Origin: Rebecca billardiae RCC1528 | Taxonomy: Eukaryota > Protista > Haptophyta | Assembly: GCA_965240325.2 (NCBI GenBank) | Contig: OZ251244.1 | Location: forward strand, 1,351,379 to 1,415,378 | DNA length: 64,000 nt | Reading direction: 5' to 3' | In this document: piece by piece, positions 10,428-63,928 of the stretch | Layout of the letters: every line of letters starts with the position of its first letter | Position numbering within the stretch: the first letter of the stretch is position 1 | Notes under the pieces: generated by a model | Database searches by the model: none | Told to the model about the DNA's origin: nothing | Seen by the model: the letters and a program-made list of their open reading frames with translations, nothing else | Program-made: the position numbers and the translations under genes

Positions 10428-17502
<7,075 letters not shown>

Positions 17503-17910
17503 CCCGCTGTCAGCCCCGCTGTGCCGGGGGCCCCACGCACGCCGCTGCGCGCGATGCACGCAGGCCGCGCAGCCAATCACGGGCGGCTGCCTGCTTGCGC
17601 GAGGGCGGTGCGGCAAGGCTGCGCGCGCCCCCGGAATGACGCCGCCGCGGCCGTCTCAGTGTGCCTCGGCAGGGCTGCGCCGGAGGGGAGGGGCGCTTCG
17701 GGCGAGAGGCGTTCAAGTCCGGCCACGGGCCGAGCGCCGCGTGATTACGCGCCGCGGGTAATCGCTACCCGCGCGCTATTATTCTCGCGACAGCAGGCGA
17801 GACCGAATACTCGCCGGTAATCGACCACCTCCGCCGGGCGCCCACCGGACTGCCGCGGAGCGCGCCGCGCTCGCATCAGGGGCACGCCTGCGCCGGGCCG
17901 CGCCGGCAGG

Positions 17911-18638
17911 ATGGCGGCGAACGCCGCGCACGCGCTGCTCAGCAGCCAGCTGCAGCGGCACACGGCCGCGCCGTACGCCGCGCACGGCGCCGAGCGCTCC
18001 GCGCCCACCACCCCCACCGCCGCCAGGCCCACCGCCCCCAAGCCCGAGCGCTCGTCCCTCGCCGGCTGCCTGCCGATCGCGGACGGCGGCGCTGCGCTCG
18101 TGGGCCGCGTGTGCCTGCTGCGCGCGCGCGCGGAGGGCGGCGGCGGCGGCGGCGGCGAGCGCGGGCGCGGGGGCGGCGCGGCAGCGGGCGAGCAGCACAC
18201 GCCGCCCGAGTTCGCCACGGGCACCGTCATCGACGTCGTCCTCGACACCGAAGGCGGCGGCGGCGGCGGCGGCGGCGGCGCGTCGGCTGCCGCGTCGCCG
18301 CGCGCGGGCGGCGGCGCGTCGGAGGCGCCGACGTCGGGCGCGGGCCGCGGCGCGGGCCCGCGCGTGCGCGTGCTCGTCCGCCTCGACGCGTCCAACGCCC
18401 ACGACACGCTCTGGCTCGACCCGCACGGCGGCGCGTGGGAGCTACTGGTTGGCGGTGCGGTGGCGTTGGCGCGCGTGCAGCCGTGGCCGCCGTGGCCCGC
18501 GCGAATCTTCCGGAAGTTTCCGCCGGTGGCGGCGCTGGGCGGCGCGGGCGGGCGGGGCGGGGCCCCGCGCACGCTCGCCGTGCCGCCCAAGCCCACCGTC
18601 TACTTCTTCGGCTGGCCCGACGCGGACGCCGACGCCGA

Positions 18639-18686
<48 letters not shown>

Positions 18687-19103
18687 TCGCGGCGCGGGCG
18701 GCGCGGCGGGCAGCGGCGACGGGCCCAACTGCCTCGGCGTGGTGGGCGCGGAGGACGTGTACCCGCTGTGCTACTGGGGCAGCGCCGCGCTCGGCGCGGA
18801 CGCCGCGCCGCCGCCGCACCGCGCCGCGGGCGAGGCGGCGGGCGCGCGCGCGTGGGCGGGCGCGCGCGCGTCCGCGCCGCTGCCGGCGGTGCCGCGCGGC
18901 GCGAGCGGCGCGGAGCTCGCCGGCGCGATCGCCGCGGCGGCGCTCGCGCGCGTGGGCACGCGGATCGAGCCGGCGCACGTGCTCGCGCCCGGCGCGGAGC
19001 CCGACGCGCCGGCCGACGCGCCGGCCGACGGCGCCGGCGGCGGGCGGCGCGCGCGCGGCGGCGCGGCGCCGGGCGCGGCCGCGGGCGCGGGCGCGCGCGG
19101 CGG

Positions 19104-19142
<39 letters not shown>

Positions 19143-20512
19143 GCACAGCGAGGCGCTCGCGCTGATGGCGGCGACGGCAGAGGCGGTGACGTGGGCGCTC
19201 TCGCACCCCGCGCACGACCCGGGCCCCGCCGACATCCCCGCCGCCGCCGCCGCCGCCGCCGCGTCGCCGCGCGCGGCGCGCGCGCCCGCGTCGCCGCGCG
19301 CAGCCGCGGCGGCCGGCGGCGGCAGCGGCGGCGGTGGCGGCGGCGGCGGCGGCGCCCCGGGCACGGCGGAGGTGTGGGCGCGCGCGGCGGTGGCCCCGGG
19401 CCGCGCGCTGCCCGCGGGCTCCACCGCGCGCGAGGCGAGCGCGCTCGAGGCGCTCGTCGGCACACGTGCGCGCCGCGCCGCCGCGCCGCGCGCGCCGCGC
19501 GCGCCGCCGCGCGCCGCCGCGCCGCGCCGCGCCGCCGCGCGCTGACGCGCGCCGCGGCCGCGCCGCGCGGTGCGCGCAGCGGTGGCGGTGTTCTGGCCGC
19601 GGCACGCGACCGCGTACGCCGGCGTCGTCGAGAGCTTCGACGCCGCCACCGGCCGCCACTTTGTGCAGTGCGCGCCGCGCGCGCCGCGCCGCGCCGCGCC
19701 GCACCGCCGCGGGGGCGGGCGCGCGGCCGCGGGCGGCGCGGCTGTGGCCGCAGGCCGCGGGCTGCCGGGCCCGCGCGGCGTGGGCGCGCCGGCTGGGCCC
19801 TGACGCGCTCGCGCCCCCCCCCCGCCCCCGGCGCGCAGCTACCCGCATTACCCGCATTACCCGCATTCCCCGCGCCGGGGCTGCGCCGAGTGGGTGCCGC
19901 TCGGCTCGGGCGCGGTGCCGTGGCGCGCGCTGGCCAAGGTGCGCGCGCTCGCGCGCTCTACCCGGATTACCCGCATTACCCGGCTGACCCGGAGGGCGGC
20001 GGCGGCGGCAGCGGCGGGGAGGGCGGCGCTCGGGCCGCGCGTGCGCCCGGGCCGCGCGCGCTGCCGGCCCCAACGGCCGCTCCGCCCTTTTCTTTTCCTG
20101 ATTTCCCGCCTTCTTTCTTCTTCCCTTTTTGTTTTTTGTTTTTTTCGCGCGCCCGCTGCTGCCGGCTTGGCCGATGTGCGCGCGCGCAGGCGGAGGCGGG
20201 CGCGCTGCTCGCGCCCGCCGCCGCGCCGCCGCGCGCGCTGCCGCCACCGGCGCCGCCGCCGCCGCCGCCGCCCAAGGGCGGCAAGCGGCGCGCCGCGGGC
20301 TCGGAAGTCGCCGCGCCGTCGCACCACCACCCCGCCCCGCCCGCCGCCGCCGCCGCGGCCGAGCCCGCCGCGCCGGGCCGGCCTGCGCCGCCCGCGTCCG
20401 CGGCCGCGCTGCACGCGTGGGCGCGCGCCGCGCGGTGCTGCCTCGTGTGCGCGCGCGCGGCGCCGCCGCGCGTGCTCGGCGGCGGCGGCGGCGCGTCCTC
20501 AGCCGCGTCGCC

Positions 20513-20548
<36 letters not shown>

Positions 20549-21352
20549 AGCCGACGCCGCCGCCGCCGACGGCGGCGGCGGCGGCGGCGGCGCGCTGCTG
20601 AGCTGCGCGGTGTGCCTGGGGCCGCACCACGCGGCGTGCGCGCGGCCGGCGCAGCCGCGCGGCGCGCCGCCGGGCGCGCGCTGGCGGTGCCACGCGTGCG
20701 CGCGCTGCGACCGGTGCGGCAGCGCGGGCGCGGGGGAGGAGGCGGGGCGGTGGGCGTTTGTCGACGGGCGCTGTCTGTGCGAGCCGTGCGCAGCGATGGC
20801 GGGCGCGGGCCGGCTGTGCGCGGCTTGCCTCCGGCCGTGGCGCCCCGGCCAGCGCGGCACGCACTGCCGAGGTGCGGCGCGCGCGCCCGGACTGCCCGCC
20901 CGGACTGCCCGCGGGGGGCGGCGGGGGAGGGCGCGCGCGCGGGTGGTGCCGAGGCGGGCGCGGGCGGGGGGCGCCGCGTGTCTGTGTGGCCGGCGCGCGC
21001 GGCCGGCGCGTGCACGCCGCCGCCGCCGCGCTCGGGCCTCAGGACGCCCCCCGCCCCCCGCGCGCGCGTGCGTGTGTGCGCGCGCGCGTGCGTGTGTGCG
21101 CGCGTGCGCGCAGGCTGTGGCGGCTGGTCGCACGTGCCGTGCGCGGCCGACGGCGCCGCCCTCGCCCCGCGGCCGCACGCCGGCGGTGCGGAGGGCGGCG
21201 GCGCGGCGGCGGCGGGCGCGGGCGGTGGCGCGGGGGCGCCGCCGCCGTTGGAATGGTGGGCGGACGAGGAGGACGATGGCGGCGGCGGCCGAAGCGGCAG
21301 CGGCAGCAGCGGCGGCAGCGGCAGCAGCGACAGCGGCGGCAGCAGCAGCGAG

Positions 21353-21384
<32 letters not shown>

Positions 21385-24300
21385 TGCCAGCGGCGGCGGC
21401 CGCGGCCGCGGGGCGCGCGGCCGCGGCGGCGCGGCGGCGCGCGGGCGCGGGCGCGGCGCGGCGCGCGGCGCGCCCGCGCCCAAGCGCGGGCGCGGCGGCG
21501 GCGGCGGCGGCAGGGGCGCGCGCGGTGGCGCGCGTGGCGGCGCGCGCGCGCCCCCGAGCGCGCCGCGCGCGCGGCCCGCCGCCGCGCCCAAGCCCGCCGC
21601 CGCGCCCACGCCCGCGCCGCCGCCGTCCGCGCCGCCGCCGTGCGCGAGCGTGCCGCGCTGCGCCGCGTGCGCCGCCGCGCGCCGCCGCGAGTCGCTGTGG
21701 TCGCTGCTGGGCACGCTGGCGGCGCTGGACGAGGACCGCGTGTTCGCGCACCACGTGGACACGCGGCTCGAGCCCTCGTACCGGCTGCACATCCCGCAGC
21801 CCATGGCCTTTGCCGAGATCCGAGCTCGGCACTGCGGCGGCAGGTAAGGCACCGCAGCCGCCGCGGTGCGCGAGGACGGCAGAGCAAGCAACCCTAACCC
21901 TAACCCTAACCCTAGCACCCTCGCCCTCACCCTATAACCCTCACCCTGGACCCAGGTACGCCACCGCGGCCGCGCTGCGCGAGGACGTCTACTTGATCTG
22001 CCGGAACGCGATGGTGTTCAACGTGTCGAGGGCGTCGCCCTTCTACCGGCTGGCGGAGCGGCTGTTCAGGGCGGCGCAGAAGACCATCGACGAGGTGTGT
22101 GCGTGTGTGTGCGTGTGCGCGTGTGTGTGCGTGTGCGCGCGTGTGTGCGCGTGTGTGTGCGTGTGTGTGCGCGTGTGCGCGTGCGTGCGCTGTGCGCTGT
22201 GCGCCGTGCGCTGCGCGCTGTGCGCTGTGCGCTGTGCGCTGCGCGCTGCGCGCTGCGCGCTGTGCGCTGCGCGCTGCGCGCTGCGCGCTGAGCCGCCCGC
22301 CGCGCGCGCACCGCACCGCACGCCTCGGCCCTCCCCCGCCCCGCCCCGCAGTACGACGCCTCGCACAGCGTGGCGGAGGGCGGCGCGCTCGTCGAGACGG
22401 AGGGCGGCGCGCGCGCGGGCAAGCGCGGCGGCGGCGGCGCGGACGGCGGCGGCGGCAAGCGGCGGCGCGGCGGCGGCGCGGACGGCGGCGGCGCGGACGG
22501 CGGCGGCGGCGGCGCGGCCGCCGCCGCCGCCTCGCCCGCCGCCGACGCCTCCGCCGCCGCTGCCGACGCCGCCGACGGTACCGACGGCGCGAGCGCGGAC
22601 GCAGACGCGGGCCCTGTCGACGGCCGGCCGTACGCGTCGATGCCGCCGCTCGTGTGTGAGCCGTGCGAGGGCGCGTGGGCCCTTGAGCTGTGCGCGCTGT
22701 GCGGCGCGGGCGGCGGGGCGTCCGAGCTGCGCGTGTGCGAGTGCTGCGGCGAGGGGTACCACTGGTACTGCGACGGCGGCGGCGGCTCGGCGCGCGCGGC
22801 CAAGGGGTGGCGGTGCGTCGGCTGCGTGGTGTGTGCCGTGTGCGGCGACGGCAGCGACGAGTCCCGGCTGCTGCTCTGCGCGTGCGGCGCGGCCGCACAC
22901 AGCGGCTGCCTGAGCCCGCCGGTCGACGCGTGGCCCGCCGCGGTGGACTGGCGCTGCGCCGCGTGCGCCGCGTGCGAGCGGTGCGGGCTCGAGCTGCCGC
23001 ACGCGCACAACACCGCAGTGCCGCCGGCCGAGCACCTCGCCCCGCTCAAGGCGCCGCTGGCCGCGCTGGCCGAGCGGCTGCTGCTGCCCCCCGCGCAGCC
23101 GGCGGCCGACGGCGGCGGCGGCGGCGGCGGCGGCGGCGCGGGCGCGGGCGCTGGGCGCGCAAAGGAGCGGCGGAGGGCGCGCGCCAAGCCGGGCGGCGCG
23201 CGCCGGCGCGCGCGGCCGCGACCGGCCGCCGCCGCGGCCGCCGCCGCGGCCGACGGCGGCGGCAGCAGCAGCAGCGCGGCGCTGGCGGGCGCGCGGGCGC
23301 ATGTCACCACGGCAGCAGAGCGCGCGCGGCGCGCGGCCGGGCGCGCCGAGCCCGGCGCCGCCGGTGCCAGCCCAGCGGCCGCCGCGTCGGCCGGGCGCGC
23401 CGGCGCCGGCGCCGAGGGCGGCGGAGGCGCCGAGGGCGGCGCTCGGCCCGAGGGCGACAGCGCGGACGGGGCGGACGCGGCGGACGCCGACGCTGGCGCG
23501 GCCGACGCGGAGATGGGCGAGCGCGGCGCCGACGCCGACGGCGACGACGACGACGAGGAGGAGGACGAGGAGGCGGAGGCACCGGCCGCTGCCGGCGGCG
23601 GCGAGCCCGCGAGCGCTGCGGCCGACTCGCCCGCCGACGCGGACGCGCACGCGCACGCGGACGCGGACGCAGCCGCGCGCGGCGCCCCGCTGCGCGCGGC
23701 CGTGCTCGAGCTGAGCAGGCGCGTGCGCGGCGTGGCCGGCGGCATGCCCGCCGGGTACGGCGCCGACCCGCTGCGCGCGCGGCTCTGCGCGCCGTGCGTG
23801 CGCGCGCACCGCGCGCGCGCGTACTGCGGCGTGTGTCTCTCGGCGTGGGAGCCGCTCGGGCTGGACGCGCTCGCGGCGGCTCTGCCCGCGCGGCTGGGCG
23901 CAAGCCTGCGCGCGCGCGCCGCCGCGGAGCGGCCCGCGGCGGGCGGCGCCGACGGCGGCGGCGGGCTCGGCGGCGCGGACGGCGGCGCGGACGCGGTCGC
24001 GTGCGACGGCTGCGATTTCTGGGTGCATACGGAGTGCGACCGCGCGCTGCGCGCGCACCCGCGGCTGCTGGGCTCGATGCGCTACCTCTGCCCGCGCTGC
24101 CGCGGCGAGCTGAGCGCGCCCGCGCCGCCGGTCTGCGCGGGCGCGCGCCGCTTCGGCGCGCTGCCCGAGCGCGTGCTCGGCGACCGCGCCGCGCCCGACG
24201 CGCCGCCGTGGCCGCCGCTGCTCGAGCCGCCGCCGCCGAGCCGCGCGCAGCTCGCCGCGCAGCAGGCGGCGGCGGAGGCGGCGGAGGCGGCGGCCGCGGC

Positions 24301-26051
24301 GGAGGCGGCCGCGCGCAAGCGCGCGCGCGCCGCCGAGGCCGCCGCCGCCGCCGCCGCCGCGCGCAGGCGCCAGCGCGAGGCGGCGGCCGCGGCGGCCGCC
24401 GCGGCGGCCGCGGACGCGGCGGCGGCCGCAGCCGCGGCCGGCGGCGGCGCGCCGCCGCCGCCGCCGGCCGCGCCGCCGCCGGCTCGGCCCGCGCAGCCGC
24501 CGGCGGCGCGGCGCGCGCCCGCGCTGCCGCGCGCGCTGCTGCCGCCCGAGTGCGGCCGCTGCGCCGGCTGCCTGGACAAGCCCAAGTTTGGAGGTGCGGC
24601 CGGGCGCAGCCGCGCGGCGCCGCCTGCGCGCGCCCCCAGCGCGCGCGCGCGCACGGCTCACGCAGCGCGCGCGCGCGAACGCGCCCGCTCGCGCGCAGGG
24701 CGCGGCACGCTGCACCGCATGTGCGACGCGCGCAGGCAGGCGCGCAAGGCGGCGCGCGCGGAGGAGGCGGCGGAGGCGGCCGCGGCGGGCGGCGGCGCGG
24801 GCAGCGGCGCGGCCGCGCAGCCGCAGCCGCAGCCGCAGCCACCCCGACCCGACCCGAGCGCTCGAGGCGGCGGCGGCGGCGGCGGCGGCGGCGGGTGCGC
24901 GTGGTGGGAGGCGGCACTGGGGCCGGCCGACGGGGCGCCGCTGGGCGTGGGCGCGGGCGCGGGCGCGGGCGGCGGGCTCGGCGCGGCGGCTGCGCACACC
25001 GGCGTTGGCAGCCCCGGCGGCGGCGGCGGCGGGTGCGCGGCGGGCGGCGCGCTGTGGGGGCTGGAGGGGCTGGCGGCACTGGCGGCAGGCGACGACGGCT
25101 GCTCGCCGCTCGAGAGCTGGCTGATGGCGGGCGCGGGGGGCACGCTCAGCCCGCCTGGGCCCGGCGCGCACGGCGGCGCCCGGCCCGAGGCGGCGCGTCA
25201 GCCGCAGCCGCAGCCGCAGCCGCGGCAGAGGCCGCAGCCGCAGCAGCAGCGGGCGTCGCTCGCCTCGCCGCCCGGGCCCTCGCCGGCTGCGCCGCCAAGC
25301 CCCCTCGCCGCATTCTTCGGCGGCGCGCAGCCGGCGCCGCAGCAGCCGGCGGAACGGCCGGGTGCGGCGGCGCGGCTGCTGCTGCCGCCGGGGCCGCTGC
25401 TGCCGCCGGGGCGCGCGGGGGCGGCGGGCGCGGGGGCGGCGGGCGCGGGGGCGGCGCCGTGGGGGCCGCCGCGGGCGCAGCAGCAGCAGCAGCAGCGCGC
25501 CCAGCCGGGGCGGCAGCGGCCGTGGGGGCAGCCGCCGCCGCCGCAGCCGCCGCAGCCGCAGCTGCAGCAGCCGCAGCCGCCGCAGCCGCAGCTGCTGCAG
25601 CCGCAGCAGCAGCAGCACTGGCCGCAGGCGCCGCAGCAGCAGCCGCCGCAGCCGCCGCTGGCGAGCTGGGCGCAGGGCGCGGGAGGGCACCCCTTCGCAC
25701 CGCCGCCTCCGCGCCCGCCCTACCCACCGCCACCGCCGGAGGCGGATGCGCAGCAGCAGCAGCAGCCGCCGGCGGCGCGGCCGCGCGCGCGCGCGCCGGC
25801 CGAGGCGGGCGCGGCACGGCTGCATGCGCCGCCGCCCGCCGAGCCCGAGCCCGACGCAGCGCAGCGCGGCGCGCCCTCGCCGCCGCCCTCCTCCTCCCCT
25901 TCGCCCTCCGCCTCCTCCCCCTCGCCCTCCGCCTCCGCCTCCGCCTCCGCCTCGGACAGCGACGACGACGGCGACGACGACGGCGGCGGCGCAGACGACT
26001 CGGGCGGCGCGGCCGGCGCCGAGCACGCGTGGGACGCCGACGCGCCGCAGC

Positions 26052-26083
<32 letters not shown>

Positions 26084-27064
26084 GCGGAGGCGGCGGGCGG
26101 CGCGGCCGGCGGCGGAGGCACGGCGGACGCGCCGCGCCGCCGCGCGCGCGCGGGCCGCGCCGCCGCGCCGCGCGCACCCTCGCCGCCGGTCTCGCCCACG
26201 CCACGGCCCGTGCGCATCGAGCGCGGCCGACGGCCAGCCCTGCCGCCTGCGCCGCTCGCGCCGCACGGGGCGCACGCGCCGCACCGCGCCGCGCCGCCGC
26301 CCGCGGGCCCCGCCGGCACGGCGGCGGCGGCCGCGGCGCGCGCGCCGCTGGTGCCGCCCGACACGCGCGTGCGCGCGCGCGCGTGCGCGCTGTGCGGCGG
26401 CTGCTCTGACGACGGGCGCTCGCTGCCGCAGCGGCTGCTGTGGGCGGATGCGGGGCAGTGGGTGCACGCCAACTGCGCCAAGTGGTCGGCGGAGGTGACG
26501 GAGGCGAAGCCAAAGGCGGACGGCGGCGCGGACGGAGCGCCCGAGCCGCCGCCGCCCGCCGCCGCCGCCGAGGGCGGCGCCGACGCGGGCGGCGGCGGCG
26601 GCGGCGCGGCCGGCGGCGGCGGCGCCGCCGAGGGCGAGGGCGGCGGCGCGCCGTGGGCGCCCTTCGAGCTGACCAACGTGCACGGCGCGATCGCGCGCGG
26701 CCGGCGCACGCACTGCACCGCGCCCGGCTGCGGCCGCGCGGGCGCCTCCCTCCTGTGCAACCTCAAGACGTGCTCGCAGCGGCTGCACCTGCCGTGCGCC
26801 GTCCGCGCGGGCGCGGTGCTCATGGCGGACGGCCGGGTGTACTGCGCGGCGCACGCGGCGCACGCGCAGGCGCTCGCGCCCGGCGGCTGTGTGGTGGGCA
26901 CGCTCGCGCTGCGCCGCGCGCTCAGCGTGCGCCGCGTGCGCGGGCGCACGCTCGGCGCCACGCGCTGGCGGCCCGGCCGCACGCTGCGCGTCGGCGGCTG
27001 CACCGTCCTCGACTTGGGCGACGCGGCGGCGGCGCGCGCGCCCACCGCCGCGCAGCCGGCGGCG

Positions 27065-27095
<31 letters not shown>

Positions 27096-28358
27096 GCGCG
27101 GCGGAGGGCGCGGCCGCCGACGGCGGCGGCGGCGCGCGGCGCAAGGGCGGCAAGGCCGCGCGGCGCGCGCACGCCGCGCACGCCGCACCAAGCGCGGAGG
27201 CGGAGGCGGCGGTCGCGCTCGCGGCCGCGCGCGCCGCCGAGCCGCTTGCGCCGCCCGGTGCGCGCGCGCTCCGCGCGCCGCGCCGCGCCGCGCGCGCGCG
27301 TGGCGCTCAGCCGCGCGCGCCCCCTCGCGCGCGCTCTCGCCGCCCCCAGGGTACGTCGCGCTGCGGCGCGTGTGCCGCCACGGCGGCGGGGGCTCTGTGG
27401 TGCGCGCCCTAGTGCTGTGCACCGTGCGCGCGCACGCGCCGCCGGCCGCGGGCGGCGGGGCGCGCGGCCGCGCCGCCGCCGCCGCCGCGCGCCGCGCGCT
27501 GCCGCCGCTCCGCTTCCGCTGCGAGGTGCTGGGCATGGCGCCGGCCGAGCAGGCGGCAGCGCCGGCCGACGCCGCCGCCGCGCCCGCGGCCGAGCCCGCC
27601 GCCGCCGGTGGCGGTGGGCGGTGGGGCGCGCGGCCGTTCCCGCCGCGCGCGGCCGCGGGCGCGGAGGGCGGCGGCGCCGAGGCGGAGGACGAGGGCTGCG
27701 CTGCGGGCGCGGTCTTCGAGTCGGTCGGCTCGCCCGAGGGCGCGGTGGGCGCGCTGCTGGCCGCGCTGCTCCCGCGCGGCGCGCCTCCGCCCGTGCTCGA
27801 CGGCTGCTGCTTCTTTGGCTTCGCGCTGCCGCACGTCGGGGCCCTGGTGAGCGGCGGGCTACTGCGCGCACACGCGGACGCGGCGGCGGCGGCGGCGCTG
27901 GCGGCCGAGGCGGCGCTGCTAGGGGCGATCGGCGGGAGCGGCGGCGGCGGCGGCGGCGCGGGCGCGGGCGGCGGCGCGGACGGCGGCGGCGGCGCGGCGG
28001 ACGGCGGCGGCGCGGCCGACGACTCGCTCGTGCGCGAGCGGGTCGCGCGCGCCGCAGCCGCGTGGGCGGCGGAGGCGGCCGCGGCCGGCGCGGCCGCGGC
28101 CGCGCCCGGCCTCGCCGCGGCCGGCGCCGACACAGCCGCCGCGGCCGCGGGCTGCGCGCGGCTGCTGGACTACATGGCCGCGCGGCCGCCGCTGCACGAG
28201 CGCCCGCCGCCGCCGCCGGGCGGGGGCGCGGGCGGCGCGTGGGGCGCGCACCTGCGCGGCGCGGTGCTCGGCCTCGCGCCGGCGGGCGCGGCGGCGGGCG
28301 GCGCGCTCGGCGCGGACGCGGCCGCCGGCACGCTGGAAGGCGGCGCCGCGCTCGCGCT

Positions 28359-29393: not shown

Positions 29394-29743
29394 TGCAACG
29401 ATGAGCAGCGGAGGCGCTGCTGGCGGCAGGCGCGGGGCGAAGCCTGCGCGAGTGGCACCTGAGCCGATCGGCGCACTGCGCCCAGGCAGCAGCCTGAAGC
29501 CGGCACGGCTCACTGTCGGCTGCTGCCGTGCTGCGCTCAATTCGGCGCCGGCTCGGTGTGAATGTGTTATGTGATTCATCGCGGTCGCGGATAGTCGTCA
29601 TTCCGAACCGGTCAGCAGATCGCCGCGCGCCGCCGAGTCGGATCGGGAACTCGGTGGGCAGCCCGACCGCAGAACGCGCGGCCGGCGGAGTATATACTAT
29701 ATGTGGCGGGGTTATTATTGCATGGCACTGTCACAATATAATA

Positions 29744-32383
29744 CACAGTGCCGGAATAATAAAACTGCTCAGGGTGACGTTTTAAGTTGTCCGCACCACT
29801 AGTCGAATCATCGGACAATTCTGAAGCGGTGCGCCTAAATTCGGCGCACCATAGGCGCGTCGAATCGTGGCACAGACCTTGGTAGCAGGCCACACCTGAG
29901 CGCGCTGCGCGCGCCGACGCGCGCTCGGCGCGGGCAAAAAATCATGCGCCGTTGGCATTACGCAGCCCCGCGCAGCGCTGTGCTCGAGCTCGGCGGCGGC
30001 GAAAGCGGGCGGGCGCACACGGCGGTGCCCGTGCGCGCTGCTCCGAGCGCAGCTGCGGCCACCCCGGCGGCATACCGCCGGTCGAGGGCACGAAAACCGA
30101 TTTTTCGGGAAAATGCAGAGCAGCGGCGCCCGAGCGCGCCCGAGCTCGTCGCAGCACAGTCTCCTGGTGGCTGCGCCCCGTGAAGCCACGCCACGCGGGG
30201 CGCTGGCGTGCGCGTGGCCTGCGCCCACCGTGCGCTGCCCGATCATGGCCGTCGACCGCTCCGAGCGCCTCACCACGCGTGCTCGAGCCCACCGATACTG
30301 ACGCCCGAGCACGGTGCCGGCAGCGCTCGCAGGTGGGCGTCGGAGAAAACACGCCGGCCGAACGAGCTTGAAGCGTCCGCCGCGATGCCAACGGCAGCGG
30401 ACGACGTGCGCGCCACCTCGGCGCCAGTCGCCCAGCCCTTGCGCGGCGGTGCGGGCTCGCTCGTTCGCCGCCATCAGCTGCGCGCGCGCAGCCCGATCAC
30501 TGCCCGCTGGTTCTGTTGTCGAGCAGCTGCGGCCTGCCACGAGCACTGCCGGACATTGAGCCACAGCGCGAGCACGCGCCTCGTCTGGCACGCGCGAGCA
30601 CTCAGCATCGTGCGTGGCCACCATGACGCGCCCATCTGCGCCAGCAGCGATGAGCACGCCGCCGTTCAGCTCGCATCGGGCTCGCTCGCGACGCAGCAAC
30701 GCGCGGCCGTAGCGGCAGCAGCGGCGCCGTCGAGCACGCGCAGCAAACAAATATGCAGCGCGGGCGAGTCGACGGTCTGGAAAATGCGCGATCACGCCAC
30801 AGCAGGCTGGCAGAGCCCGCCCGAGCTGCAGCATGCCGTAGGTGCTGCCCCAAGCTCTCGACTGCCCGTAAGCGGCGGCATGTGCGGCGGCGCCGGCGGC
30901 GGCCATGCTGCCACGCCGTTGCGCGCCGCGGGGCGCCGTCGGCACCTCTGTGGTGAAGCGCACAGAGCTCGAGCCCACGGGGGCTGGCGACCGTCAAACC
31001 GACACCCCATGACGCGGGGCTGCGTGCGCCAGCTGCGCGCACTCCGTGGGCCCACCTAGCCCGCTCGAGCAGCTCGCCTTGGGTGCGCGCAGCTGCTCGA
31101 GCACACTGGTATGGGACGCCTGCCTGCGGTGCCGCCGAGCACATGCGGCCGACGGTCACTCAGCACGGGCGACTCGACGGCGGCGAGCAGGCGCGACGGC
31201 CTCGCCGCGCCGCGGAAAAGCCTGCCCGGGCTGCAGCACGCCGTAGGAGCAGCCCAGCGCCCTCCTCCGCCCTCCAGCTTCGGCGCGCGCAGCAGGCCCG
31301 GCGGCGGCCATGCTGGCGTGCCCAAGCATGAAGATGGGCGCGGCCGGCCGCGCCGTCGCAAAGCGCGCAGAACTCGAGCTCGGGGGGGCGGACGGCCGCC
31401 AAACTGGCGCGGCAGGACGTGGCACTGCGTGCGCCAGCTGCGCGCACCCGCTGCGCCCGCGTGGCCCGTGCGAGCGCCGCGCCTCGAGCACACGCAGCTG
31501 CTCGACACAGCCACGGCAGTGTGGCTTGTGCGCGTGCACGTGATCAGTCTCAGCTCTGAGGCGCGCGCTCAGGAGGGCTGCGGCCGGGCCGAGCGCGATC
31601 TGCGCGGACGGTACAGCCTGGCGGCTCATGCCAGCCAGCCCAAAGCCCGCTCCGCCATCCGCGTCATGGCGCTCCAGCCTCTCGCGTGCTGCGCTGCAGC
31701 CGCGCTCGGCTGAAGACGTCGCCCAGCCCGCCTTGCACGCGGCTGAGCAGTGGCAGCCAGGCGAAGCGTCGTCGCGGGCGAGGCTGCGCTGGGTGATGCG
31801 GCTCGGGTCGGTGGGCAAGTCGCACCCCGCCGTCGGTCGCCTCCACGCCTCAGGCTCGCTCGAGGTCAAAGACAACTGCGCGGCGCGGCGTTTGCGCGGG
31901 CGGGCCGCGGGCGTGGCGGGGTGTACGCGTGCAATGTCACAGCCTCCCACACAATTTCAGGAGGGTGAGACGCACCGCCAGCGGCACCCGCACACAATCC
32001 CACCCTGCGCGAGCCACCTGCCGTGTCGACTGAAGCATCAGGCTCGGGCGCAACCGCGGGCGGCGCATGCAAGAAGCTCGCGAAACGCACCGCGCGCGCC
32101 GTGAGGGCGAAAGGAGAGCACCCGTCAGGGCGGCGAGGAACTTGCCCAGCGCCACGCGGAAGACGACCCCAGCCCGCGTCGACGCATAGTCGGGCCCGCG
32201 AGCAGCCTCGTCGGTCTTCGCCGAGTAGATCGCGCCGCGAGCCGAGGCACCGCTCGTTTGAGGCTCCGTCCGCCGCGAAGTCGCGGCTTCCACCCGAGTT
32301 CCACTGTCCGGCCGAGACCGGATTCGCTGACTCGAGCTGCGGACCGTCCGAAGCGTCACGGAAAATTCCAATCCTGCACTGTG
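29744..32383. mobile_element. Element A: non-autonomous DNA transposon with CACAGTG...CACTGTG termini (CMC/Transib-like ends)
   Basis: Left end CACAGTGCCGGAAT; right end (reverse complement) CACAGTGCAGGATT. TA flanks both ends. Both ends share a subterminal GTGACG...GTCCGCA block. The right ~460 bp are colinear (inverted) with 58436-58899. Internal degenerate duplication ~30750-31100 vs ~31180-31510. No intact transposase seen. Confidence 0.7.
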
Positions 32384-34411
32384 TATACATATATATATAT
32401 ATAACTGATCAGATTGACGACGATCATCGGCTGTCCGTAAGATCGATGACGGTGCTGGGAGCGCAATATGCGCCGCCGCCGGTATCAACAGCACTCCTGC
32501 CTGCCATTCGGCGGCCCGAGCCAGGGCCGGGCCGAGCTCAAGTCCGGCTGCCATCTAGTGGCCACCCCAGTCTGTTCTTGCGGTCATTGCGCGGTGCCAC
32601 GCCAGGGGCTTATAGTCGAGCCTGCTCTGATGTGCGCGGCGCACAACGACCCCGAACTGAATAGGTGGGTCCCTGGCGATTTTCCAGCGGTCTTTTAAAC
32701 ATTTACCGGGTTTTCTGGCCGGATTTCTTTTCGCGCGGGGCGCGGCTCGGGAAAATCGCCGGGCCGCCGGCCGAGGTCCGATCTGAACGCTCCCGACGAT
32801 GTCGGAGCGCCTCTCCAGCGCGACCGAGCCGCCGTGTGTCGGGTAGACCACAGCCAACACCTATCGCGCGCTCCAGCGCTTTGCGCGTGCTCACGGATGG
32901 GATCCGTGGTCACACATCCCCCGCCTGGCACGTGCCCGCATGTTTGACTCTCGCCCGGCTAGACGCGTACAGACAACTTGAATCGATCGGCGGGTGTTCG
33001 ACCCGTGCCTTCGAGCAGGGTCAGTTTTTGCCACATGCGGGTCAGGCGACGGGAGGCATGGGCCAGTGTCGTGCACGGGCATGCTCTTGACGCTCCCGCC
33101 ATCTTGAGCAGCTCAACGCACCGTGAAGGTGACATTTGGGCTGTGCGCAAGCTGCTCGTGAGAACGCACGACAGCCAGCCCCGGGCTCTCGGGGAGCCAT
33201 GTGAGCGATTGGCGACTTCCGAGAGGGCGTGTTTGGTGGGGGTTGGTACCAATCATCGACCAGCAGGCCTAGGATGGGTGCACTGAGGACTTGGGATGCT
33301 GAGAAGCCGCCGCGATGTGCGGCGAGCACGCCGACTTGCCATCCGTGTGCAAGATCCAGCGCCAGGAAGATCAGCAGGGCCTTTGACAGCGGCAGCAGGC
33401 GCTCAGCGATCCTTCCCTATGCCGAGTGTGGGCATAGTATGCGGTGCTCGAGGGTGGTCGCAGGATATGGGTCCATTCTTGACAGAACGCGGTCGCGTTG
33501 ACAGGCGCGGGTGCCACCCCACGCTGTTGCTCCTGCCATTGGGTGGTCCCACTCGTTCCGCTTGTGGTCTGCGAAGACTCGTACTCAGCAACTCTACGGC
33601 TAGGCGTAGTAGACCCCTCAGACGCATGTCTGATGATTGCCCGGCACGTTCTCGTCGTCACGTTGGGTGTACTTGAGCGAGCGGAAGCCGCAACGTGATG
33701 GCTAGGCCAGCAGCTCAACCATCTGACGTCTCGCCGGCCAACTGGCTGAGTGCTCTCAGCCTAGCAGCAGCGTCGGTGAACCTATCGTATTGCTGCCTGG
33801 CGAGAAGATGGTAGGAGGCATCGTCGGCGGCATGGGCTGCAGCTGCGGTAGTCATGGACTGGTGGCGGCCTCACGCGGGTGGGCATACGACGACCGGTGA
33901 CACGCGGAGTACGAGCACGGAAGCCGCCGAACGCGGCAAGCTCCGGCGGTGGCGTTGGCTGATAGTCCAGCCTCGACGGCGGAGGGCTCCCGTGTGACGA
34001 CGGTGGCATGCTCGGTGGCGGGCGATGGTGTGTGCCTCGGCACGCAGCCCGCCACAAACACTGCCACTCGCGCGCAGGCAGTCCGGTTGCGGCCCGGGTT
34101 GCCTGTGTCCGCGTCGCTGGCGGCGCCTATTCGATGACCCAACAAACGTACCCACATATATCGGAACGAATTTGAATACATAGTGAACCGCATCCACGGT
34201 CAATATAAAGTGGGTAACACTCATACTATATACGGGTAAGTGGCTATATATGAAGTGGGTAATATGCTCTATCTAGGGGGTCCATGACAGCAGCCCACTG
34301 ATTTGTGATTTTCGACAACTATGCGATTTAGGTGTCTGACGAGCGAGGCGCTTGCGAAGGCACCCACAAATATGTCCCGGAACCCAGCCCAGCCGTCAGA
34401 AGCACGCAATA

Positions 34412-58435: not shown

Positions 58436-58569
58436 CACAGTGCAGAATCGGGATTTTCCATGACGTTCCGGTCGGTCCGCAGCCCGGAGTCGCTCAGATC
58501 GCCATCTGGGAGGGTTGCCAACCGGCCGCGCGCCTTCCGCCAACCTTCGCGAGCCGCGGGCGGAAGAGC

Positions 58570-59731
58570 TTGCCCCCAAAAGCAGCGCGCGCGCACGCGG
58601 CCAAGAACGGCGCGGGGGCGCGCGGGCCTGACTACGCGTTCGAGTGGGGTGCTGATCTCGTCCGCGCAGCGCGCGAGTTCTCCCTCGACACCGGATGGAT
58701 GGCCCGCTTTCGCCGTCACAGCAAGCACGGTGCGCGCCGCGCTGCTCGCTGGCGCGCCGCGCGCGAGTGCGACCGAGCCTGATGCCTCAGCAGACGTGGC
58801 AGGTGGCTCGCGCAGGGTGGGATTGTGTGCGGGTGCCGCTGGCGGTGCGTCTCACCCTCCTGAAATTGTGTGGGAGGCTGTGAAATTGCACGCGTACACT
58901 GAACTGCGTCTCGGCCCGCATGCGCTCGCATCGCCGCGCCGCGCAGGCTCAGACTGGAGCAAGGACTACAAGCGCCGGCCGCGGCGGAAGGCGGCGGGCA
59001 AGGCGCGCGGGGGCAAGCGCGGCCGGCCGCGCCTGCCGCCGCCGCCAGCCCACAAGGTTCTCGCGCTGATCAACGTGGATTTGCACATCTCGGGTCTGCG
59101 CAGGCGAATCTGGACCGCCCTTCAGCAGGTGCGTTTCAAGGCCTGCCGTGGCTTCGTTCGGGGGGTTTGGGACCCGTACGATTTCCCGGTGTTCGCGCAC
59201 ATGGTGGAGGCTCTGCTGGGCAAGCGCCCGCAGGCTTTGATCGACGACCGAGCGGAGGAGGCCTCCGACCTGCACTCGGCGGTGCGCGACGTCTTCACGA
59301 TCGATCTGACGGACCCGAAGGTGCTCGAGAGCGTCTGTGGCTTCCACACGTCGATCCCGCGCACAAAGACGGCGGTGGGGAACGCGCGCCGCACGCCGAT
59401 GGGCAACTACAACGTGCTCGTGCGCCTGCGCCTCACTCACACGAGGAAGCGCCGGCCGACGACCATCGGGCGGAGGGAGTGGCTGCAATGGGAGGCGTGG
59501 GCCGCGACGCTGCACACCGACGGCCGCATCTCGATGCCGACGGGCCTGGAGAAGGAGCTGCGCGCGAAGCAGCTGCGGCGGCTGAAGGAGCGGCTGCGAA
59601 CGATTCCGTACCAGGCGGGGCAGCGGGGCCAGCAGTACGACTCTCGCTTGGACGCCATCTGCCAGACCATCCTTCGGCAGGACCGGCAGGCGCGGCTGCA
59701 GCAGTCGGCGAGCGGCCCGGCCGAGATGTGA
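58570..59731 (+). CDS. Element E gene, part 1: basic protein of unknown family (probable intron 58730-58946)
   Basis: Phase-1 GT-AG intron joins ...FRRHSKH-G-SDWSKDYKRRPRRK in frame. NLS/AT-hook-like KRGRPR and a globular-looking region (FVRGVWDPYDFPVFAHMVEALL...WLQWEAW). Start codon not identified. Confidence 0.6.
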
Positions 59732-60840
59732 GCGCGCGCGGCGCGGGCGCGGGTGCCCAGCTGGGCGCGGGCCGGGTGGACGCAGCCGCGGGTACGTCGC
59801 CGCGACGCGCGCGGCGCGCGCGCACCGGCGCGTCTTCGCGCGCGCTCACGCGCCCCATCGCCCGCGCGAGCCCGAGCCCGCCCGCGCTCACCGCCGCCCG
59901 CCGCCCCCGCGCCGCGCGCCACCCCCGCGCCGCGGCCGCACGCTCTCGCGCAGGCGCGCTCAGCGCGCTCGGCGCGAGCGCGGGTGCCCAGCTGGGCGCG
60001 GTCGGGGTGGACGCAGCCGCGGGTACGTCGGCGCGACGCGCGCGGCGCGCGCGCGCAGGCGCGTCTTCGCGCGCGCCCGCGCGCCCCGTCGCCCGCCCGC
60101 GCCCGCGCCCGCCCGCGCTCACCGCCGCGCGCCGCCCCCGCGCCGCGGTCGCGCGCGCTCGCGCGCAGGCGCGCTCAGCGCGCGCGGCGCGAGCGCGGGC
60201 GCCCAGCCGGGCGCGGGCCGGGTGGACTCAGCCGCGGGTACGTCGACGCGCCGCGCGCGCCACGCGCGCGCCGCCGCGCGCGCGCAGGCGCGTCTTCGCG
60301 CGCGCCCGCGCGCCCCGTCGCCCGCCCGCGCCCGCGCCCGCCCGCGCTCACCGCCGCGCGCCGCCCCCGCGCCGCGGTCGCGCGCGCTCGCGCGCAGGCG
60401 CGCTCAGCGCGCGCGGCGCGAGCGCAGGCGCCCAGCCGGGCGCGGGCCGGGTGGACGCAGCCGCGGGTACGTCGACGCGCGCGGCGCGCGCGCGCGGGCT
60501 CGTCCTCGCGCACGCCCACGCGCCCCGCCGCCCGCGCCCGCCCGCGCTCACCGCCGCCCGCCGCTCCGGCGTTGCGCGCCGCGCTACACGCCGCGCCTGC
60601 GCGACGGCGGCAGGTGCGCCGAGCGCACGCGACGCGAGCGCGGGCGCTCAGGTGGGCGTAGGTGGGATGGACGCAGCCGCGGGTACGTCGGCGCGACGCG
60701 CGCGGCGCGCACGCGCCGGCGCGTCTTCGCGCGCGCCCGCGCGCCCCGTCGCCCGCCCGCGCCCGCGCCCGCCCACGCTCACCGCCGCGCGCCGCGCGCC
60801 GCCCCCGCGCTGCGCAGCGGCCGCGCGTGCTCGCGCGCAG
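59730..60840 (+). repeat. Tandem array of five ~215-230 bp units
   Basis: Anchor GGAC(G/T)CAGCCGCGGGTACGTCG recurs at ~59778, 60009, 60224, 60453 and 60669. Confidence 0.9.
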
Positions 60841-61920
60841 GCGTGAGCGCCGGTGCTGGGTCGTCGGGCTTGCCCGACGACCCCGGTGCGCGTGCGACAG
60901 GGCACGGCTCGTCCAAGAGGCGGTGGCGGCGGCAAACCCCTGGCTTCAACACGCGGTCGAAGCGGGCAAGATCGATCCGCGCCGCCAAGGCAAAGGCATC
61001 ACACGAACAGCAGTCTGACACAGACGACTGCGCGCCCGACGAGCCGCCACCCGGCGATGCTGCCGTCAACCCGGCGCAGCCGATCGAGGTGGACGCAGAC
61101 GGGCCGGCGTCGCCGCCAGCCATGCCGGCCCCGCCAACCCCGCCCACGGTGCCGGCCGCTGCCGCCGCCGCCGCCGTCGCCTCCCCGCCGTCGTCGCCGC
61201 CGCCGTTCGCCTCCCCGCTGCCGGCGGTCACGCGCTCTCGCGCCGCGCTCGGCCACCACGACGAGAATTACGAGCCGCCGCTGCCGCGCGACCTGGGCAT
61301 GACCACCGCCGAGTACAACGACAAGCTGGTGCTCGAGCTGAAGAAGCAGCGCCACGTGGTGGCCGACTTGCACGACAAGCTCGTCGCTCTGCAGGCGCTC
61401 GTCGACGTCGGCACGCCCGACACGCTCAACACCACCGTGGAGACGTACCAGACGGCCTTGCACCGCGCTGCCGAGCTCGAGGCGACGATGGAGCTGCGCG
61501 ACCGGCTGATCGAGGAGCTGCGGAAGGAGGCGGCGGTGTCGGAGCAGGAGAAGATGGACTTGCTGGGCCGCGTGTCCCTCCTGGACGAGGACGTGCGCCG
61601 TCTCGAGTCGACCGTCCACTCGCTGGTCCCAAAGCTGGCTTTGGTCGAGGCCGAGCTCACCGAGGTGATGGCCGAGGTGAGTTTGACGAGGACGCGCGAC
61701 GACAAGATGCTGGCCAAGGTGGCGACGCTCGAGAGGAAGTTGAAGGACGCGCAGGGGGAGTGCAGGCGGGCATCTGACCGAGCTCGGAAGGCGCAAGCTC
61801 GTCGCGCCGGCCAGACCGAGCAGGTCGCGGCCAATCACGCCATCGACCCGTCGGCCAACCCGCTCCGCGTGATCGGCGGGCAGCACTCGCAGCATCCGCG
61901 CGCCGTGCGGCAGCGCGGCT
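60841..61920 (+). CDS. Element E gene, part 2: Pro-rich plus long coiled-coil protein, truncated at the chromosome end
   Basis: After a GCAG acceptor at 60840: basic NLS-like tract, Pro-rich linker, heptad-rich segment (LVLELKKQRHVVADLHDKLVALQ...LERKLKDAQ). The frame runs without a stop into the AT-rich module and telomere repeats. Confidence 0.65.
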
Positions 61921-61931
61921 TAGAAGTATGT

Positions 61932-62044
61932 TTTCTCGAGATTGACCGAGCCAAATTCTCTCAAAATTGGAGGGCCCTTAGCCCTTCCCATTTCCATGGC
62001 AGAGCCCAAGTCTCGTTGAAATCAGTTCGGTCAATCTCGAGAAA
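61932..62044. repeat. Perfect 18-bp inverted repeat with 77-bp spacer (MITE-like or hairpin module)
   Basis: TTTCTCGAGATTGACCGA (61932-61949) / TCGGTCAATCTCGAGAAA (62027-62044); abrupt GC drop relative to upstream sequence. Confidence 0.85.
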
Positions 62045-62065
62045 TTCTCATTTTAGTACTGGCGA

Positions 62066-62166
62066 CCCTAACCACCACCCTAACCCTAACCCTTACCTGC
62101 GCCCTAACCCTTACCTGCGCCCTAACCCTTACCTGCGCCCTAACCCTTACCTGCGCCCTAACCCTA
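62066..62166. repeat. Reverse-oriented telomere-variant array, (CCCTAACCCTTACCTGCG)x4
   Basis: Four exact 18-bp units at 62084-62155 flanked by CCCTAA units. Confidence 0.95.

Positions 62167-62378: not shown

Positions 62379-62419
<41 letters not shown>

Positions 62420-62818: not shown

Positions 62819-62856
<38 letters not shown>

Positions 62857-63002: not shown

Positions 63003-63043
<41 letters not shown>

Positions 63044-63887: not shown

Positions 63888-63928
<41 letters not shown>

What the first reader, a model, noticed from the sequence alone, without database searches (positions are those of the whole stretch)
29744..32383. Transposon family whose ends are the V(D)J heptamer CACAGTG, with asymmetric bipartite TIRs
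Seen: all three ends in the window (29744, 32383 reversed, 58436) start CACAGTGC, then a poorly conserved spacer, then a conserved block (G/A)TGACG...GTCCGCA. The spacer is 23 nt at one end and 17 nt at the other end type (both copies). Known: CACAGTG is the RSS heptamer; Transib and ProtoRAG ends resemble it and RSS/ProtoRAG ends are bipartite and asymmetric. Caveats: no nonamer, and only a 2-bp TA duplication rather than the 5-bp Transib TSD, so a CACTA/Chapaev-type element is equally plausible.
Basis: partly seen in the sequence, partly recalled or inferred. Interest (0 to 1): 0.75.

Follow-up and report, generated by a model that had tools for sequence, protein, structure and literature searches.

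The report
RAG1-fold transposon family, symmetric ends
This is one of about sixty near-identical copies of a recently mobile, non-coding jumping element in a very GC-rich alga. Its 6.2-kb master copy encodes an enzyme that folds like the antibody-gene recombinase RAG1. The claimed 12/23-like asymmetry of its ends is only a private 6-base insertion in this one copy.

Summary
The element at 29744-32383 is real. It is a 2.6-kb non-autonomous DNA transposon with about 60 copies, 0.19% mean divergence and perfect 2-bp target duplications of variable sequence in 29 of 30 copies. It sits in AT-rich islands of a roughly 72% GC genome.

All ends start CACAGTG and carry two further conserved boxes, TGACGYT and GTCCGCA. 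The asymmetry is refuted: 125 of 129 ends genome-wide have the same 16-nt gap after CACAGTGC, and the window's left end has a private 6-bp insertion.

The third end (58436) starts a telomere-truncated copy of a 6.2-kb autonomous element, which is intact on contig C14. That element's 795-aa DDE core has no Pfam match but folds like RAG1: Z 17-19 over about 470 residues in two independent models. BbRAGL and HzTransib come next, and other transposases score 9 or less. A chain of sequence profiles also links it to RAG1/RAG1L.

The 2-bp duplication, AT-rich targets, lack of a nonamer and lack of a RAG2-like gene exclude Transib/ProtoRAG membership. It is best read as a distinct haptophyte branch of the CACTA-Mirage-Chapaev-Transib assemblage.

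A distant metagenomic relative keeps the CAC tip and a GACGTT box in the same register, so the bipartite but symmetric end design is conserved.

This scan had already followed up the C14 element on other DNA (s1-348445) and reached the same conclusion.

The parts
29742..29743 (.). Left copy of the 2-bp target site duplication (TA)
   Evidence: TA lies on both sides of this copy. 29 of 30 copies have a perfect 2-bp duplication of variable sequence.
29744..32383 (+). Non-autonomous DNA transposon, 2640 bp (family norm 2633 bp), non-coding, about 72% GC
   Evidence: at least 40 full-length copies at 99-100% identity; 129 matching ends in the genome; 0.19% mean pairwise divergence among 30 copies; internal ORFs have no Pfam match.
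29744..29795 (+). Left terminal inverted repeat. Heptamer CACAGTG at 29744-29750, GTGACGTT box at 29774-29781, GTCCGCA at 29789-29795. It is 52 bp here and 46 bp in the family.
29757..29762 (+). Private 6-bp insertion (TAATAA; placement ambiguous by a base or two) that creates the apparent 23-nt spacer
   Evidence: it is absent from all other listed left ends, and 125 of 129 ends have the 16-nt gap.
30809..31505 (+). Internal direct repeat, two 292-nt units 405 bp apart at 72% identity. This is non-coding filler of the element.
32338..32383 (-). Right terminal inverted repeat, 46 bp. Heptamer at 32377-32383, GTGACGCT box at 32352-32359, GTCCGCA at 32338-32344, all read on the minus strand.
32384..32385 (.). 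Right copy of the 2-bp target site duplication (TA)
58436..58481 (+). 46-bp terminal repeat of the autonomous element (right-end type): CACAGTG, ATGACGTT box and GTCCGCA in the same register
   Evidence: It is identical to the end of the intact copy at G000:C14:822041.
58436..61917 (+). Truncated copy (3482 of 6204 bp) of the autonomous element. It keeps the N-terminal region, a ~230-bp tandem-repeat stretch and the coiled-coil region of the transposase gene, but lacks the whole catalytic core.
   Evidence: 99.7% identity to L031:7204-3723; only one full copy (C14), this truncated copy and one 0.6-kb fragment (C7) exist in the genome.
61918..62075 (+). 156-bp subtelomeric unit that replaces the rest of the autonomous element. 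This is context, not part of the transposon.
   Evidence: about 40 copies, nearly all within 1-5 kb of contig ends and pointing outward.

Best explanation
The 2.6-kb element is a non-autonomous cut-and-paste DNA transposon. It carries no gene of its own. It is most likely moved in trans by the transposase of a related 6.2-kb element, which is intact once in the genome on contig C14 and present in this window only as a telomere-truncated copy at 58436-61917.

That transposase is a DDE enzyme with probable catalytic residues D161, D251 and E700, and a conserved C311-x2-C314 zinc knuckle. Its whole core adopts the RAG1/Transib architecture.

Both ends of every element present the same 46-bp design: the cleavage-site heptamer CACAGTG (12 conserved bases), about 12 variable bases, a TGACGYT box at positions 26-32, and GTCCGCA at positions 40-46. 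The enzyme probably reads the CAC tip in its active site and the inner boxes with a second DNA-binding part. This resembles how RAG1 reads heptamer and nonamer, but with equal spacing at both ends, so there is no 12/23 rule.

Integration is by a 2-bp staggered attack, strongly biased to short AT-rich islands in a very GC-rich genome.

Shown: mobility, copy number, duplication length, end architecture, fold, and homology to RAG1. Inferred: trans-mobilisation by the C14 copy, the catalytic triad, which protein part reads which box, and a hairpin-type excision chemistry by analogy with RAG1 and Transib.
For: Mobility and anatomy:
- At least 40 full-length copies at 99-100% identity.
- 129 ends match the pattern, against 0 for the reversed control.
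- 0.19% mean divergence among 30 copies.
- Perfect 2-bp duplications in 29 of 30 copies, with 11 different dinucleotides.
- Flanks within 20 bp are 33% GC, against 67% at 0.5-1 kb away.

Link to the autonomous element:
- It shares the 46-bp end design, about 190 bp of the left end at 90% identity, and about 300 bp near the right end at 80%.
- The C14 copy has its own 2-bp duplication, AT.

Enzyme:
- No Pfam hit.
- AlphaFold2 model from 86 sequences: pLDDT 81.8, pTM 0.78.
- The top 48 Foldseek PDB hits are all RAG1, BbRAGL or HzTransib.
- VIA-align gives RAG1 Z 19.2 (466 residues, rmsd 4.5 A; model residues 42-766 against RAG1 460-1007), BbRAGL 16.4 and HzTransib 16.0. The next best are P element 8.8, ISCth4 8.0 and Hermes 6.6.
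- A second model built from 16 core-clade sequences only, searched without Foldseek against 48,161 chains, gives RAG1 Z 17.0, BbRAGL 16.1 and HzTransib 11.9, with everything else at 9.0 or below.

Sequence chain:
- Core clade against an outer group by hhalign: E 3.8e-42 over 496 columns.
- Outer group profile against PDB sequences: BbRAGL 8e-13 and RAG1 8e-12.
- The combined profile aligns the RAG1 D708/C727/C730 region and the H937/H942/E962 region.
- D161, D251, C311, C314 and E700 are conserved in nearly all relatives that cover them.

End design elsewhere:
- A 5957-bp metagenomic element encodes a relative that is about 25% identical over local BLASTP segments.
- It has 33-bp perfect inverted repeats that start with CAC and carry GACGTT at positions 27-32, the same register as here.
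Against: - No experiment and no insertion-polymorphism data were available.
- The C14 transposase gene needs at least one 46-nt GT..AG intron to be in frame. Its true N-terminus is unresolved.
- The right-end repeats of the two elements differ at about 7 of 46 positions, so cross-mobilisation is plausible but unproven.
- The core clade alone gives no significant sequence hit to RAG1, so homology for this protein rests on the fold plus a transitive profile link.
- The RAG1-type H(3-4)H pair before the last E is replaced in this protein, by A and W at the equivalent positions.
- No solved structure of a CACTA, Mirage or Chapaev transposase exists, so the fold match cannot tell a Transib-like enzyme from a CMC-like one.
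Confidence: 0.85

Rival explanations
1. This is the first reader's reading: a Transib/ProtoRAG-type element whose two ends differ in spacer length like a 12-RSS and a 23-RSS. On this view the enzyme would pair unlike ends.
For: - Heptamer CACAGTG at every end.
- RAG1-fold transposase in the autonomous partner.
- In the window copy the two gaps really are 23 and 17 nt.
Against: - 125 of 129 ends have the identical gap, and the 23-nt gap is a private 6-bp insertion.
- The autonomous element itself has both ends in the same register.
- The duplication is 2 bp, not the 5 bp that defines Transib (PMC1131882).
- There is no A-rich nonamer, and targets are AT-rich, not GC-rich.
- Only one plausible coding gene was seen in the element, and no RAG2-like or other accessory domain was detected.
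Confidence: 0.03
2. An ordinary member of an already named CMC lineage (Mirage, En/Spm or the fungal ESTA group). Its transposase looks RAG1-like only because all CMC transposases share that fold.
For: - CAC..GTG termini and a 2-bp duplication fit Mirage, ESTA and PlavakaA as described in PMC12730594.
- ESTA transposases also hit RAG1 by HHpred (PMC12730594).
- No CMC structure is solved, so the fold cannot discriminate.
Against: - None of 86 relatives matches DUF1258 (Mirage) or Transposase_21 (En/Spm) even at E 0.1. The only sub-threshold Pfam signals are DUF1280 (Chapaev; 4 members) and RAG1 (2 members).
- Protein-language-model neighbours rank RAG1 and DUF1280 clusters at 0.91-0.92, above Transposase_21/DUF1258 at 0.84.
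- A 3-sequence profile found only 171 proteins at E<1e-3 among 1.84 billion representatives. Every one that carries a name is a hypothetical protein of Pavlovales or an unnamed transcript ORF.
- The duplication is not TA-specific, unlike ESTA.
Confidence: 0.12

Closest known systems
Transib transposons and RAG1 / ProtoRAG (HzTransib, BbRAGL, vertebrate RAG1 core)
   Same: - The transposase core has the same overall architecture: Z 16-19 over 420-470 residues, covering RAG1 residues 460-1007.
- It has a DDE triad with a C-x2-C zinc knuckle after the second D.
- Element ends begin with the heptamer CACAGTG and have a second conserved box at a fixed distance.
   Different: - The target duplication is 2 bp, not 5 bp.
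- Targets are AT-rich, not GC-rich.
- There is no A-rich nonamer.
- Spacing is equal at both ends.
- There is no RAG2-like gene.
- The RAG1-type H(4)H pair is lost in this protein.
[quoted passage not shown]
- The protein has an N-terminal coiled coil.
- It is below the threshold of every Pfam RAG1 model.
- The host is a haptophyte alga, not an animal.
Chapaev / Chapaev3 (Pfam DUF1280)
   Same: - CAC..GTG termini.
- Weak sub-threshold DUF1280 matches in four distant relatives.
- Language-model neighbours include DUF1280 clusters.
- Chapaev is itself grouped with Transib by Kapitonov and Koonin (PMC4411706).
   Different: - Chapaev makes 3-4-bp duplications (TWA in Chapaev3; PMC4079192).
- This element's own protein has no DUF1280 match.
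- The Chapa zinc-finger domain was not looked for.
Mirage (Pfam DUF1258) and En/Spm-CACTA (Pfam Transposase_21)
   Same: - 2-bp duplication (Mirage).
- CAC termini.
- Membership of the same broad assemblage.
   Different: - No DUF1258 or Transposase_21 signal in any of 86 relatives.
- Termini are CACAG, not CACTA.
- En/Spm makes 3-bp duplications.
ESTA, the fungal En/Spm-like transposons with TA duplications (Kojima 2025, PMC12730594)
   Same: - 2-bp duplication.
- Transposase similarity to RAG1 detectable only by sensitive methods.
- Placed in the CMCT clade.
   Different: - ESTA duplicates TA specifically, whereas here only 10 of 30 duplications are TA.
- ESTA is known from rust fungi.

Membership tests
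Transib superfamily | 5-bp target site duplication (PMC1131882) | tested here: not met
   2 bp in 29 of 30 copies; 2 bp (AT) for the autonomous copy.
Transib superfamily | About 38-bp terminal repeat made of a CACAATG-type heptamer, a 23-bp spacer and an A-rich nonamer | tested here: not met
   The heptamer is present. No A-rich nonamer lies at 12 or 23 bp. The inner boxes are TGACGYT at positions 26-32 and GTCCGCA at 40-46.
Transib superfamily | Transposase homologous to the RAG1 core | tested here: met
   Fold Z 19.2 and 17.0 to RAG1 in two independent models. Transitive profile link: E 3.8e-42, then 8e-12. Pfam RAG1 models are not reached.
Transib superfamily | Preference for GC-rich targets | tested here: not met
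   flanks within 20 bp are 33% GC in a roughly 72% GC genome.
RAG / ProtoRAG transposon | Asymmetric ends obeying a 12/23-type rule | tested here: not met
   125 of 129 ends have the same spacing. The window's longer spacer is a private 6-bp insertion.
RAG / ProtoRAG transposon | A RAG2-like partner gene inside the element | tested here: not met
   one gene on one strand. The other long ORFs are antisense or low-complexity, and no Pfam domain was found. This is a limited test because no expression data were available.
Chapaev | Invariable CAC..GTG termini (PMC4079192) | tested here: met
Chapaev | 3-4-bp target site duplication | tested here: not met
   2 bp.
Chapaev | Transposase of the DUF1280 family | tested here: inconclusive
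   4 of 86 relatives match below threshold (best E 6e-5). The element's own protein has no match.
En/Spm (CACTA) | CACTA termini, 3-bp duplication and a Transposase_21 domain | tested here: not met
Mirage | 2-bp target site duplication | tested here: met
Mirage | Transposase of the DUF1258 family (PMC3985635) | tested here: not met
   no match at E 0.1 in any of 86 relatives; feature score 0.84 only.
CMCT clade (CACTA-Mirage-Chapaev-Transib, PMC12730594) | CA..TG termini and 2-5-bp duplications | tested here: met
CMCT clade (CACTA-Mirage-Chapaev-Transib, PMC12730594) | [quoted passage not shown] | tested here: met
   C311 in 44 of 46 and C314 in 51 of 52 sequences that cover those positions. 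D161, D251 and E700 are conserved.
CMCT clade (CACTA-Mirage-Chapaev-Transib, PMC12730594) | H(3-4)H motif shortly before the last E | tested here: inconclusive
   present in 18 of 60 relatives (the outer group). It is replaced in the core clade, including this element's protein.
ESTA | TA-specific 2-bp duplication | tested here: not met
   TA in only 10 of 30 copies.
ESTA | Transposase clustering with ESTA references | not testable with these tools
Non-autonomous DNA transposon | Terminal inverted repeats, target duplications, many copies, no transposase gene, and ends shared with a coding element | tested here: met

The most novel reading that the evidence does not exclude
The haptophyte clade may be a deep, previously unnamed branch next to Transib/RAG1 and Chapaev. 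It would keep an RSS-like bipartite end (a CAC-heptamer tip plus a second box at a fixed distance, conserved even in a relative only about 25% identical) but use it symmetrically and integrate with a 2-bp stagger. If so, the bipartite end design predates the 12/23 asymmetry, and stagger length is a freely evolving trait of the RAG1 fold. With one intact master copy and about 60 near-identical passengers, the family would be a currently active and experimentally tractable RAG1-fold system outside animals.
Probability: 0.35. Interest if true: 0.7.

Novelty: new variant of a known kind. Interest (0 to 1): 0.5.

Why it matters
RAG1-like cut-and-paste enzymes are known almost only from animals, where they are studied as the ancestors of V(D)J recombination. 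Here a RAG1-fold transposase sits in an apparently active family in a haptophyte alga. It uses heptamer-tipped, two-box ends but makes 2-bp duplications and prefers AT-rich targets.

This gives a natural contrast for asking which features of RAG1 and Transib are ancestral. The heptamer tip and the two-part end recognition look ancestral. The 5-bp stagger, the GC-rich target choice and the 12/23 asymmetry look derived.

For genome annotation, it explains a prominent repeat family that current Pfam-based and library-based tools would leave unclassified.

The window copy on its own is an ordinary passenger element, and the exciting asymmetric-end claim does not hold.

Tried and rejected
- The word-indexed protein search with the 795-aa core returned nothing, probably swamped by the Ala/Gly/Asp low-complexity insert. 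The exhaustive HMMER search replaced it.
- A single-protein search and a 3-sequence profile search against PDB sequences gave only low-complexity noise.
- Core-clade-only profiles did not reach RAG1 by sequence. I therefore report the link as transitive, plus the fold.
- A metagenome scan with the paralogue alignment found nothing. A second scan with P0153 found one complete element.
- I looked for family-type ends around the two distant genomic paralogues. The C13 gene is bracketed by CACAGTG and CACTGTG but has no inner boxes and no clean duplication. C20 has nothing convincing. Both are left as unresolved.
- Subterminal repeats of the GTCCG and TGACG motifs, of the kind seen in CACTA elements, show no evident clustering beyond the terminal repeats (positions listed, no statistical test).
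- Internal ORFs of the 2.6-kb element have no Pfam family, so there is no evidence of a captured gene.
- The duplication of the metagenomic element could not be settled from one copy. It is AT only if its left tip has two extra bases.
- The spliced transposase was not assembled.
Full report
**Observation**

CACAGTGC occurs three times in the window: at 29744 (+), 32383 (-) and 58436 (+). Three hits to an 8-mer are not above chance on their own, since 44 of 100 shuffles give at least 3. All three sites, however, continue with an R-TGACG-YT box and then GTCCGCA. The full pattern occurs 129 times in the 72-Mb genome, against zero for the reversed control. The window belongs to a eukaryote with about 72-86% GC, and it ends in a TTAGGG telomere at a contig end.

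**The element is mobile and young**

- The 2640-bp stretch has at least 40 full-length matches at 99-100% identity.
- Thirty extracted copies differ by 0.19% on average.
- Twenty-nine of the 30 have a perfect 2-bp target duplication, with eleven different dinucleotides and TA in only ten.
- Flanks within 20 bp are 33% GC, against 67% at 0.5-1 kb away. The element therefore lands in short AT-rich islands.
- Its interior has only chance ORFs without Pfam families, plus one internal direct repeat.
- It is a non-autonomous DNA transposon.

**The asymmetry is not a family trait**

- Typical copies are 2633 bp. Their left end has the same 16-nt gap between CACAGTGC and the TGACG box as the right end.
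- Genome-wide, 125 of 129 ends have exactly that gap.
- The window's left end carries a private 6-bp insertion at about 29757-29762. Three other left ends carry +2 or +3 bp.
- Both ends of the autonomous element are also in register.
There is no 12/23-like design.

**The third end and the autonomous element**

- The end at 58436 belongs to a 6204-bp element that is intact once in the genome, at G000:C14:815838-822041 (L031:1001-7204), with an AT duplication.
- The window holds only its first 3482 bp, at 99.7% identity.
- At 61917 it is replaced by a 156-bp unit found at about 40 places, nearly all within a few kb of contig ends, and then by telomere repeats. The window copy therefore lacks the catalytic core.
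- The 2.6-kb family shares with the 6.2-kb element the 46-bp end design, about 190 bp at the left (90% identity) and about 300 bp near the right (80%). This is the usual relation of passenger to master.

**The transposase gene**

- On the minus strand of L031, a 795-aa ORF (1278-3665) is preceded by a coiled-coil ORF.
- A 46-nt GT..AG interval (L031:3723-3678) would join the two in frame. I established this by frame arithmetic only and did not join the exons.
- The ORF has no Pfam match and no PDB sequence match.
- Two distant paralogues in the same genome (26% and 22% identity over the aligned core) lie in long ORFs near contig ends.

**Relatives**

- A profile of the three paralogues, run against 1.84 billion representatives, found 171 proteins at E<1e-3 and 45 at E<1e-10.
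- The only ones carrying a name are hypothetical proteins of Pavlovales sp. CCMP2436; the others with a source label are unnamed MMETSP transcript ORFs or 'hypothetical protein'. The host is therefore probably a pavlovophyte haptophyte.

**Fold**

- An AlphaFold2 model from 86 relatives (pLDDT 81.8, pTM 0.78) matches only RAG1, BbRAGL and HzTransib among its top 48 Foldseek PDB hits.
- VIA-align gives RAG1 Z 19.2 (466 residues, rmsd 4.5 A; model 42-766 against RAG1 460-1007), BbRAGL 16.4 and HzTransib 16.0. The next hits are P element 8.8, ISCth4 8.0 and Hermes 6.6.
- The relatives fall into two groups: a core clade and an outer group.
  - To check that the outer group did not drive the result, I refolded with 16 core-clade sequences only (pLDDT 73.6).
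  - I searched that model against 48,161 chains without Foldseek. RAG1 scored 17.0, BbRAGL 16.1 and HzTransib 11.9. Everything else scored 9.0 or below, mostly over about 100 residues.

**Sequence-level link to RAG1**

- The core clade alone does not reach RAG1.
- It aligns to the outer group at E 3.8e-42 over 496 columns.
- The outer group reaches BbRAGL at 8e-13 and RAG1 at 8e-12.
- The combined profile aligns the RAG1 D708/C727/C730 region and the H937/H942/E962 region.
- In this protein the corresponding residues are D251, C311/C314 and E700. D161 sits in the first strand of the RNase H fold. All are conserved in nearly every relative that covers them.
- The RAG1-type H(3-4)H pair is present in 18 of 60 relatives but is replaced in the core clade.

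**End design in a distant relative**

- A marine metagenome contig (L038) carries a 5957-bp element encoding P0153. P0153 is 32% identical to one paralogue and about 25% identical to this transposase over local BLASTP segments.
- Its 33-bp perfect inverted repeats start with CAC, not with the full heptamer, and carry GACGTT at positions 27-32. That is exactly the register of the TGACGYT box here.
- The two-part end, a tip plus an inner box at fixed distance, is therefore conserved and symmetric. Only CAC of the heptamer is conserved.

**Classification**

- Transib is defined by 5-bp duplications, GC-rich targets and a heptamer-spacer-nonamer repeat (PMC1131882). None of these is met apart from the heptamer.
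- Chapaev has CAC..GTG termini but makes 3-4-bp duplications (PMC4079192).
- Mirage corresponds to DUF1258 and Chapaev to DUF1280 (PMC3985635). Among 86 relatives there is no DUF1258 or Transposase_21 signal, and only sub-threshold DUF1280 (4 members) and RAG1 (2 members).
- Language-model neighbours rank RAG1 and DUF1280 clusters above Transposase_21/DUF1258. I treat these as leads only.
- Kojima (PMC12730594) defines a CMCT clade with CA..TG termini, 2-5-bp duplications and C(2)C/H(3-4)H motifs. It includes fungal ESTA elements, which have TA duplications and a RAG1 match by HHpred.
- This family fits that assemblage as a distinct haptophyte branch. It is not a Transib or ProtoRAG element.
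- Placement relative to ESTA, Mirage and Chapaev needs reference sequences that I could not obtain as tool outputs.

**Earlier notes of this scan**

- The C14 element was already followed up (s1-348445), with the same conclusion, which I reached independently before reading it.
- Another CAC-ended 1.8-kb family with 2-bp duplications was noted (s1-346381).
- A note that a 2.6-kb copy was single-copy (s1-332074) is contradicted.

**What is new in this report**

- The refutation of the asymmetry, with genome-wide counts.
- The passenger-master link between the 2.6-kb and 6.2-kb elements.
- The independent second fold model.
- The explicit profile chain to RAG1.
- The conserved inner box in a metagenomic relative.
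- The telomere-truncated copy in the window.

**Limits**

- No experiment or population data were available.
- No CMC transposase structure exists for comparison.

Noticed in passing
window 61918-64000: Unusual chromosome end. A 156-bp unit is present at about 40 places, nearly all 1-5 kb from contig ends and always pointing outward. It is followed by about 90 bp of C-strand-type repeats (CCCTAA mixed with a CCCTTACCTGCG variant) in inverted orientation, and then by about 1.85 kb of TTAGGG. The same 156-bp unit also abuts a different breakpoint of the 6.2-kb transposon on contig C7 (4408-4563 next to 4563-5175). It therefore seems to cap broken sequences.
   Followed up: partly
window 61917, equivalent to L031:3723: The truncation point of the window's autonomous copy falls within a base or two of the predicted exon-intron boundary (the GT of the 46-nt intron) of the transposase gene. 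This may be coincidence and was not pursued.
   Followed up: no
L035:3684-8537 (G000:C13, about 4 kb from the contig end) and L036:3727-7569 (G000:C20, about 9 kb from the contig start): Two distant paralogues of the transposase lie in uninterrupted ORFs of 1617 and 1280 codons in subtelomeric DNA. They are 26% and 22% identical to the core over the full alignment. The C13 ORF is bracketed by CACAGTG and CACTGTG, but without inner boxes or a clean duplication. They may be old single-copy elements or domesticated genes.
   Followed up: partly
window 16000-28000: A 12-kb block reaches 81-86% GC, far above the window's already high 72-75%.
   Followed up: no
window 29729-29737: GGCACTGTC, one mismatch from the family's right tip GCACTGTG, lies a few bases upstream of the element's left end inside the AT-rich island. 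It may be a remnant of another insertion or a chance match.
   Followed up: no
window 31353-31519: About 167 bp inside the 2.6-kb element is 96% identical to sequence lying about 830 bp outside the left end of the intact C14 autonomous copy (L031:1-170). This could be a shared repeat or a captured fragment.
   Followed up: no
L010, L011, L021 (G000:C10 at 772-833 kb): Three copies of the element share identical flanks and the same AG duplication. They were multiplied by a roughly 20-40-kb segmental duplication and not by transposition.
   Followed up: no
L031:4784-5909, equivalent to window about 59730-60860: About five tandem ~230-bp repeats (82-84% identity) lie inside the autonomous element, between the N-terminal region and the coiled coil. 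They read as Arg/Ala-rich low complexity in all frames.
   Followed up: no
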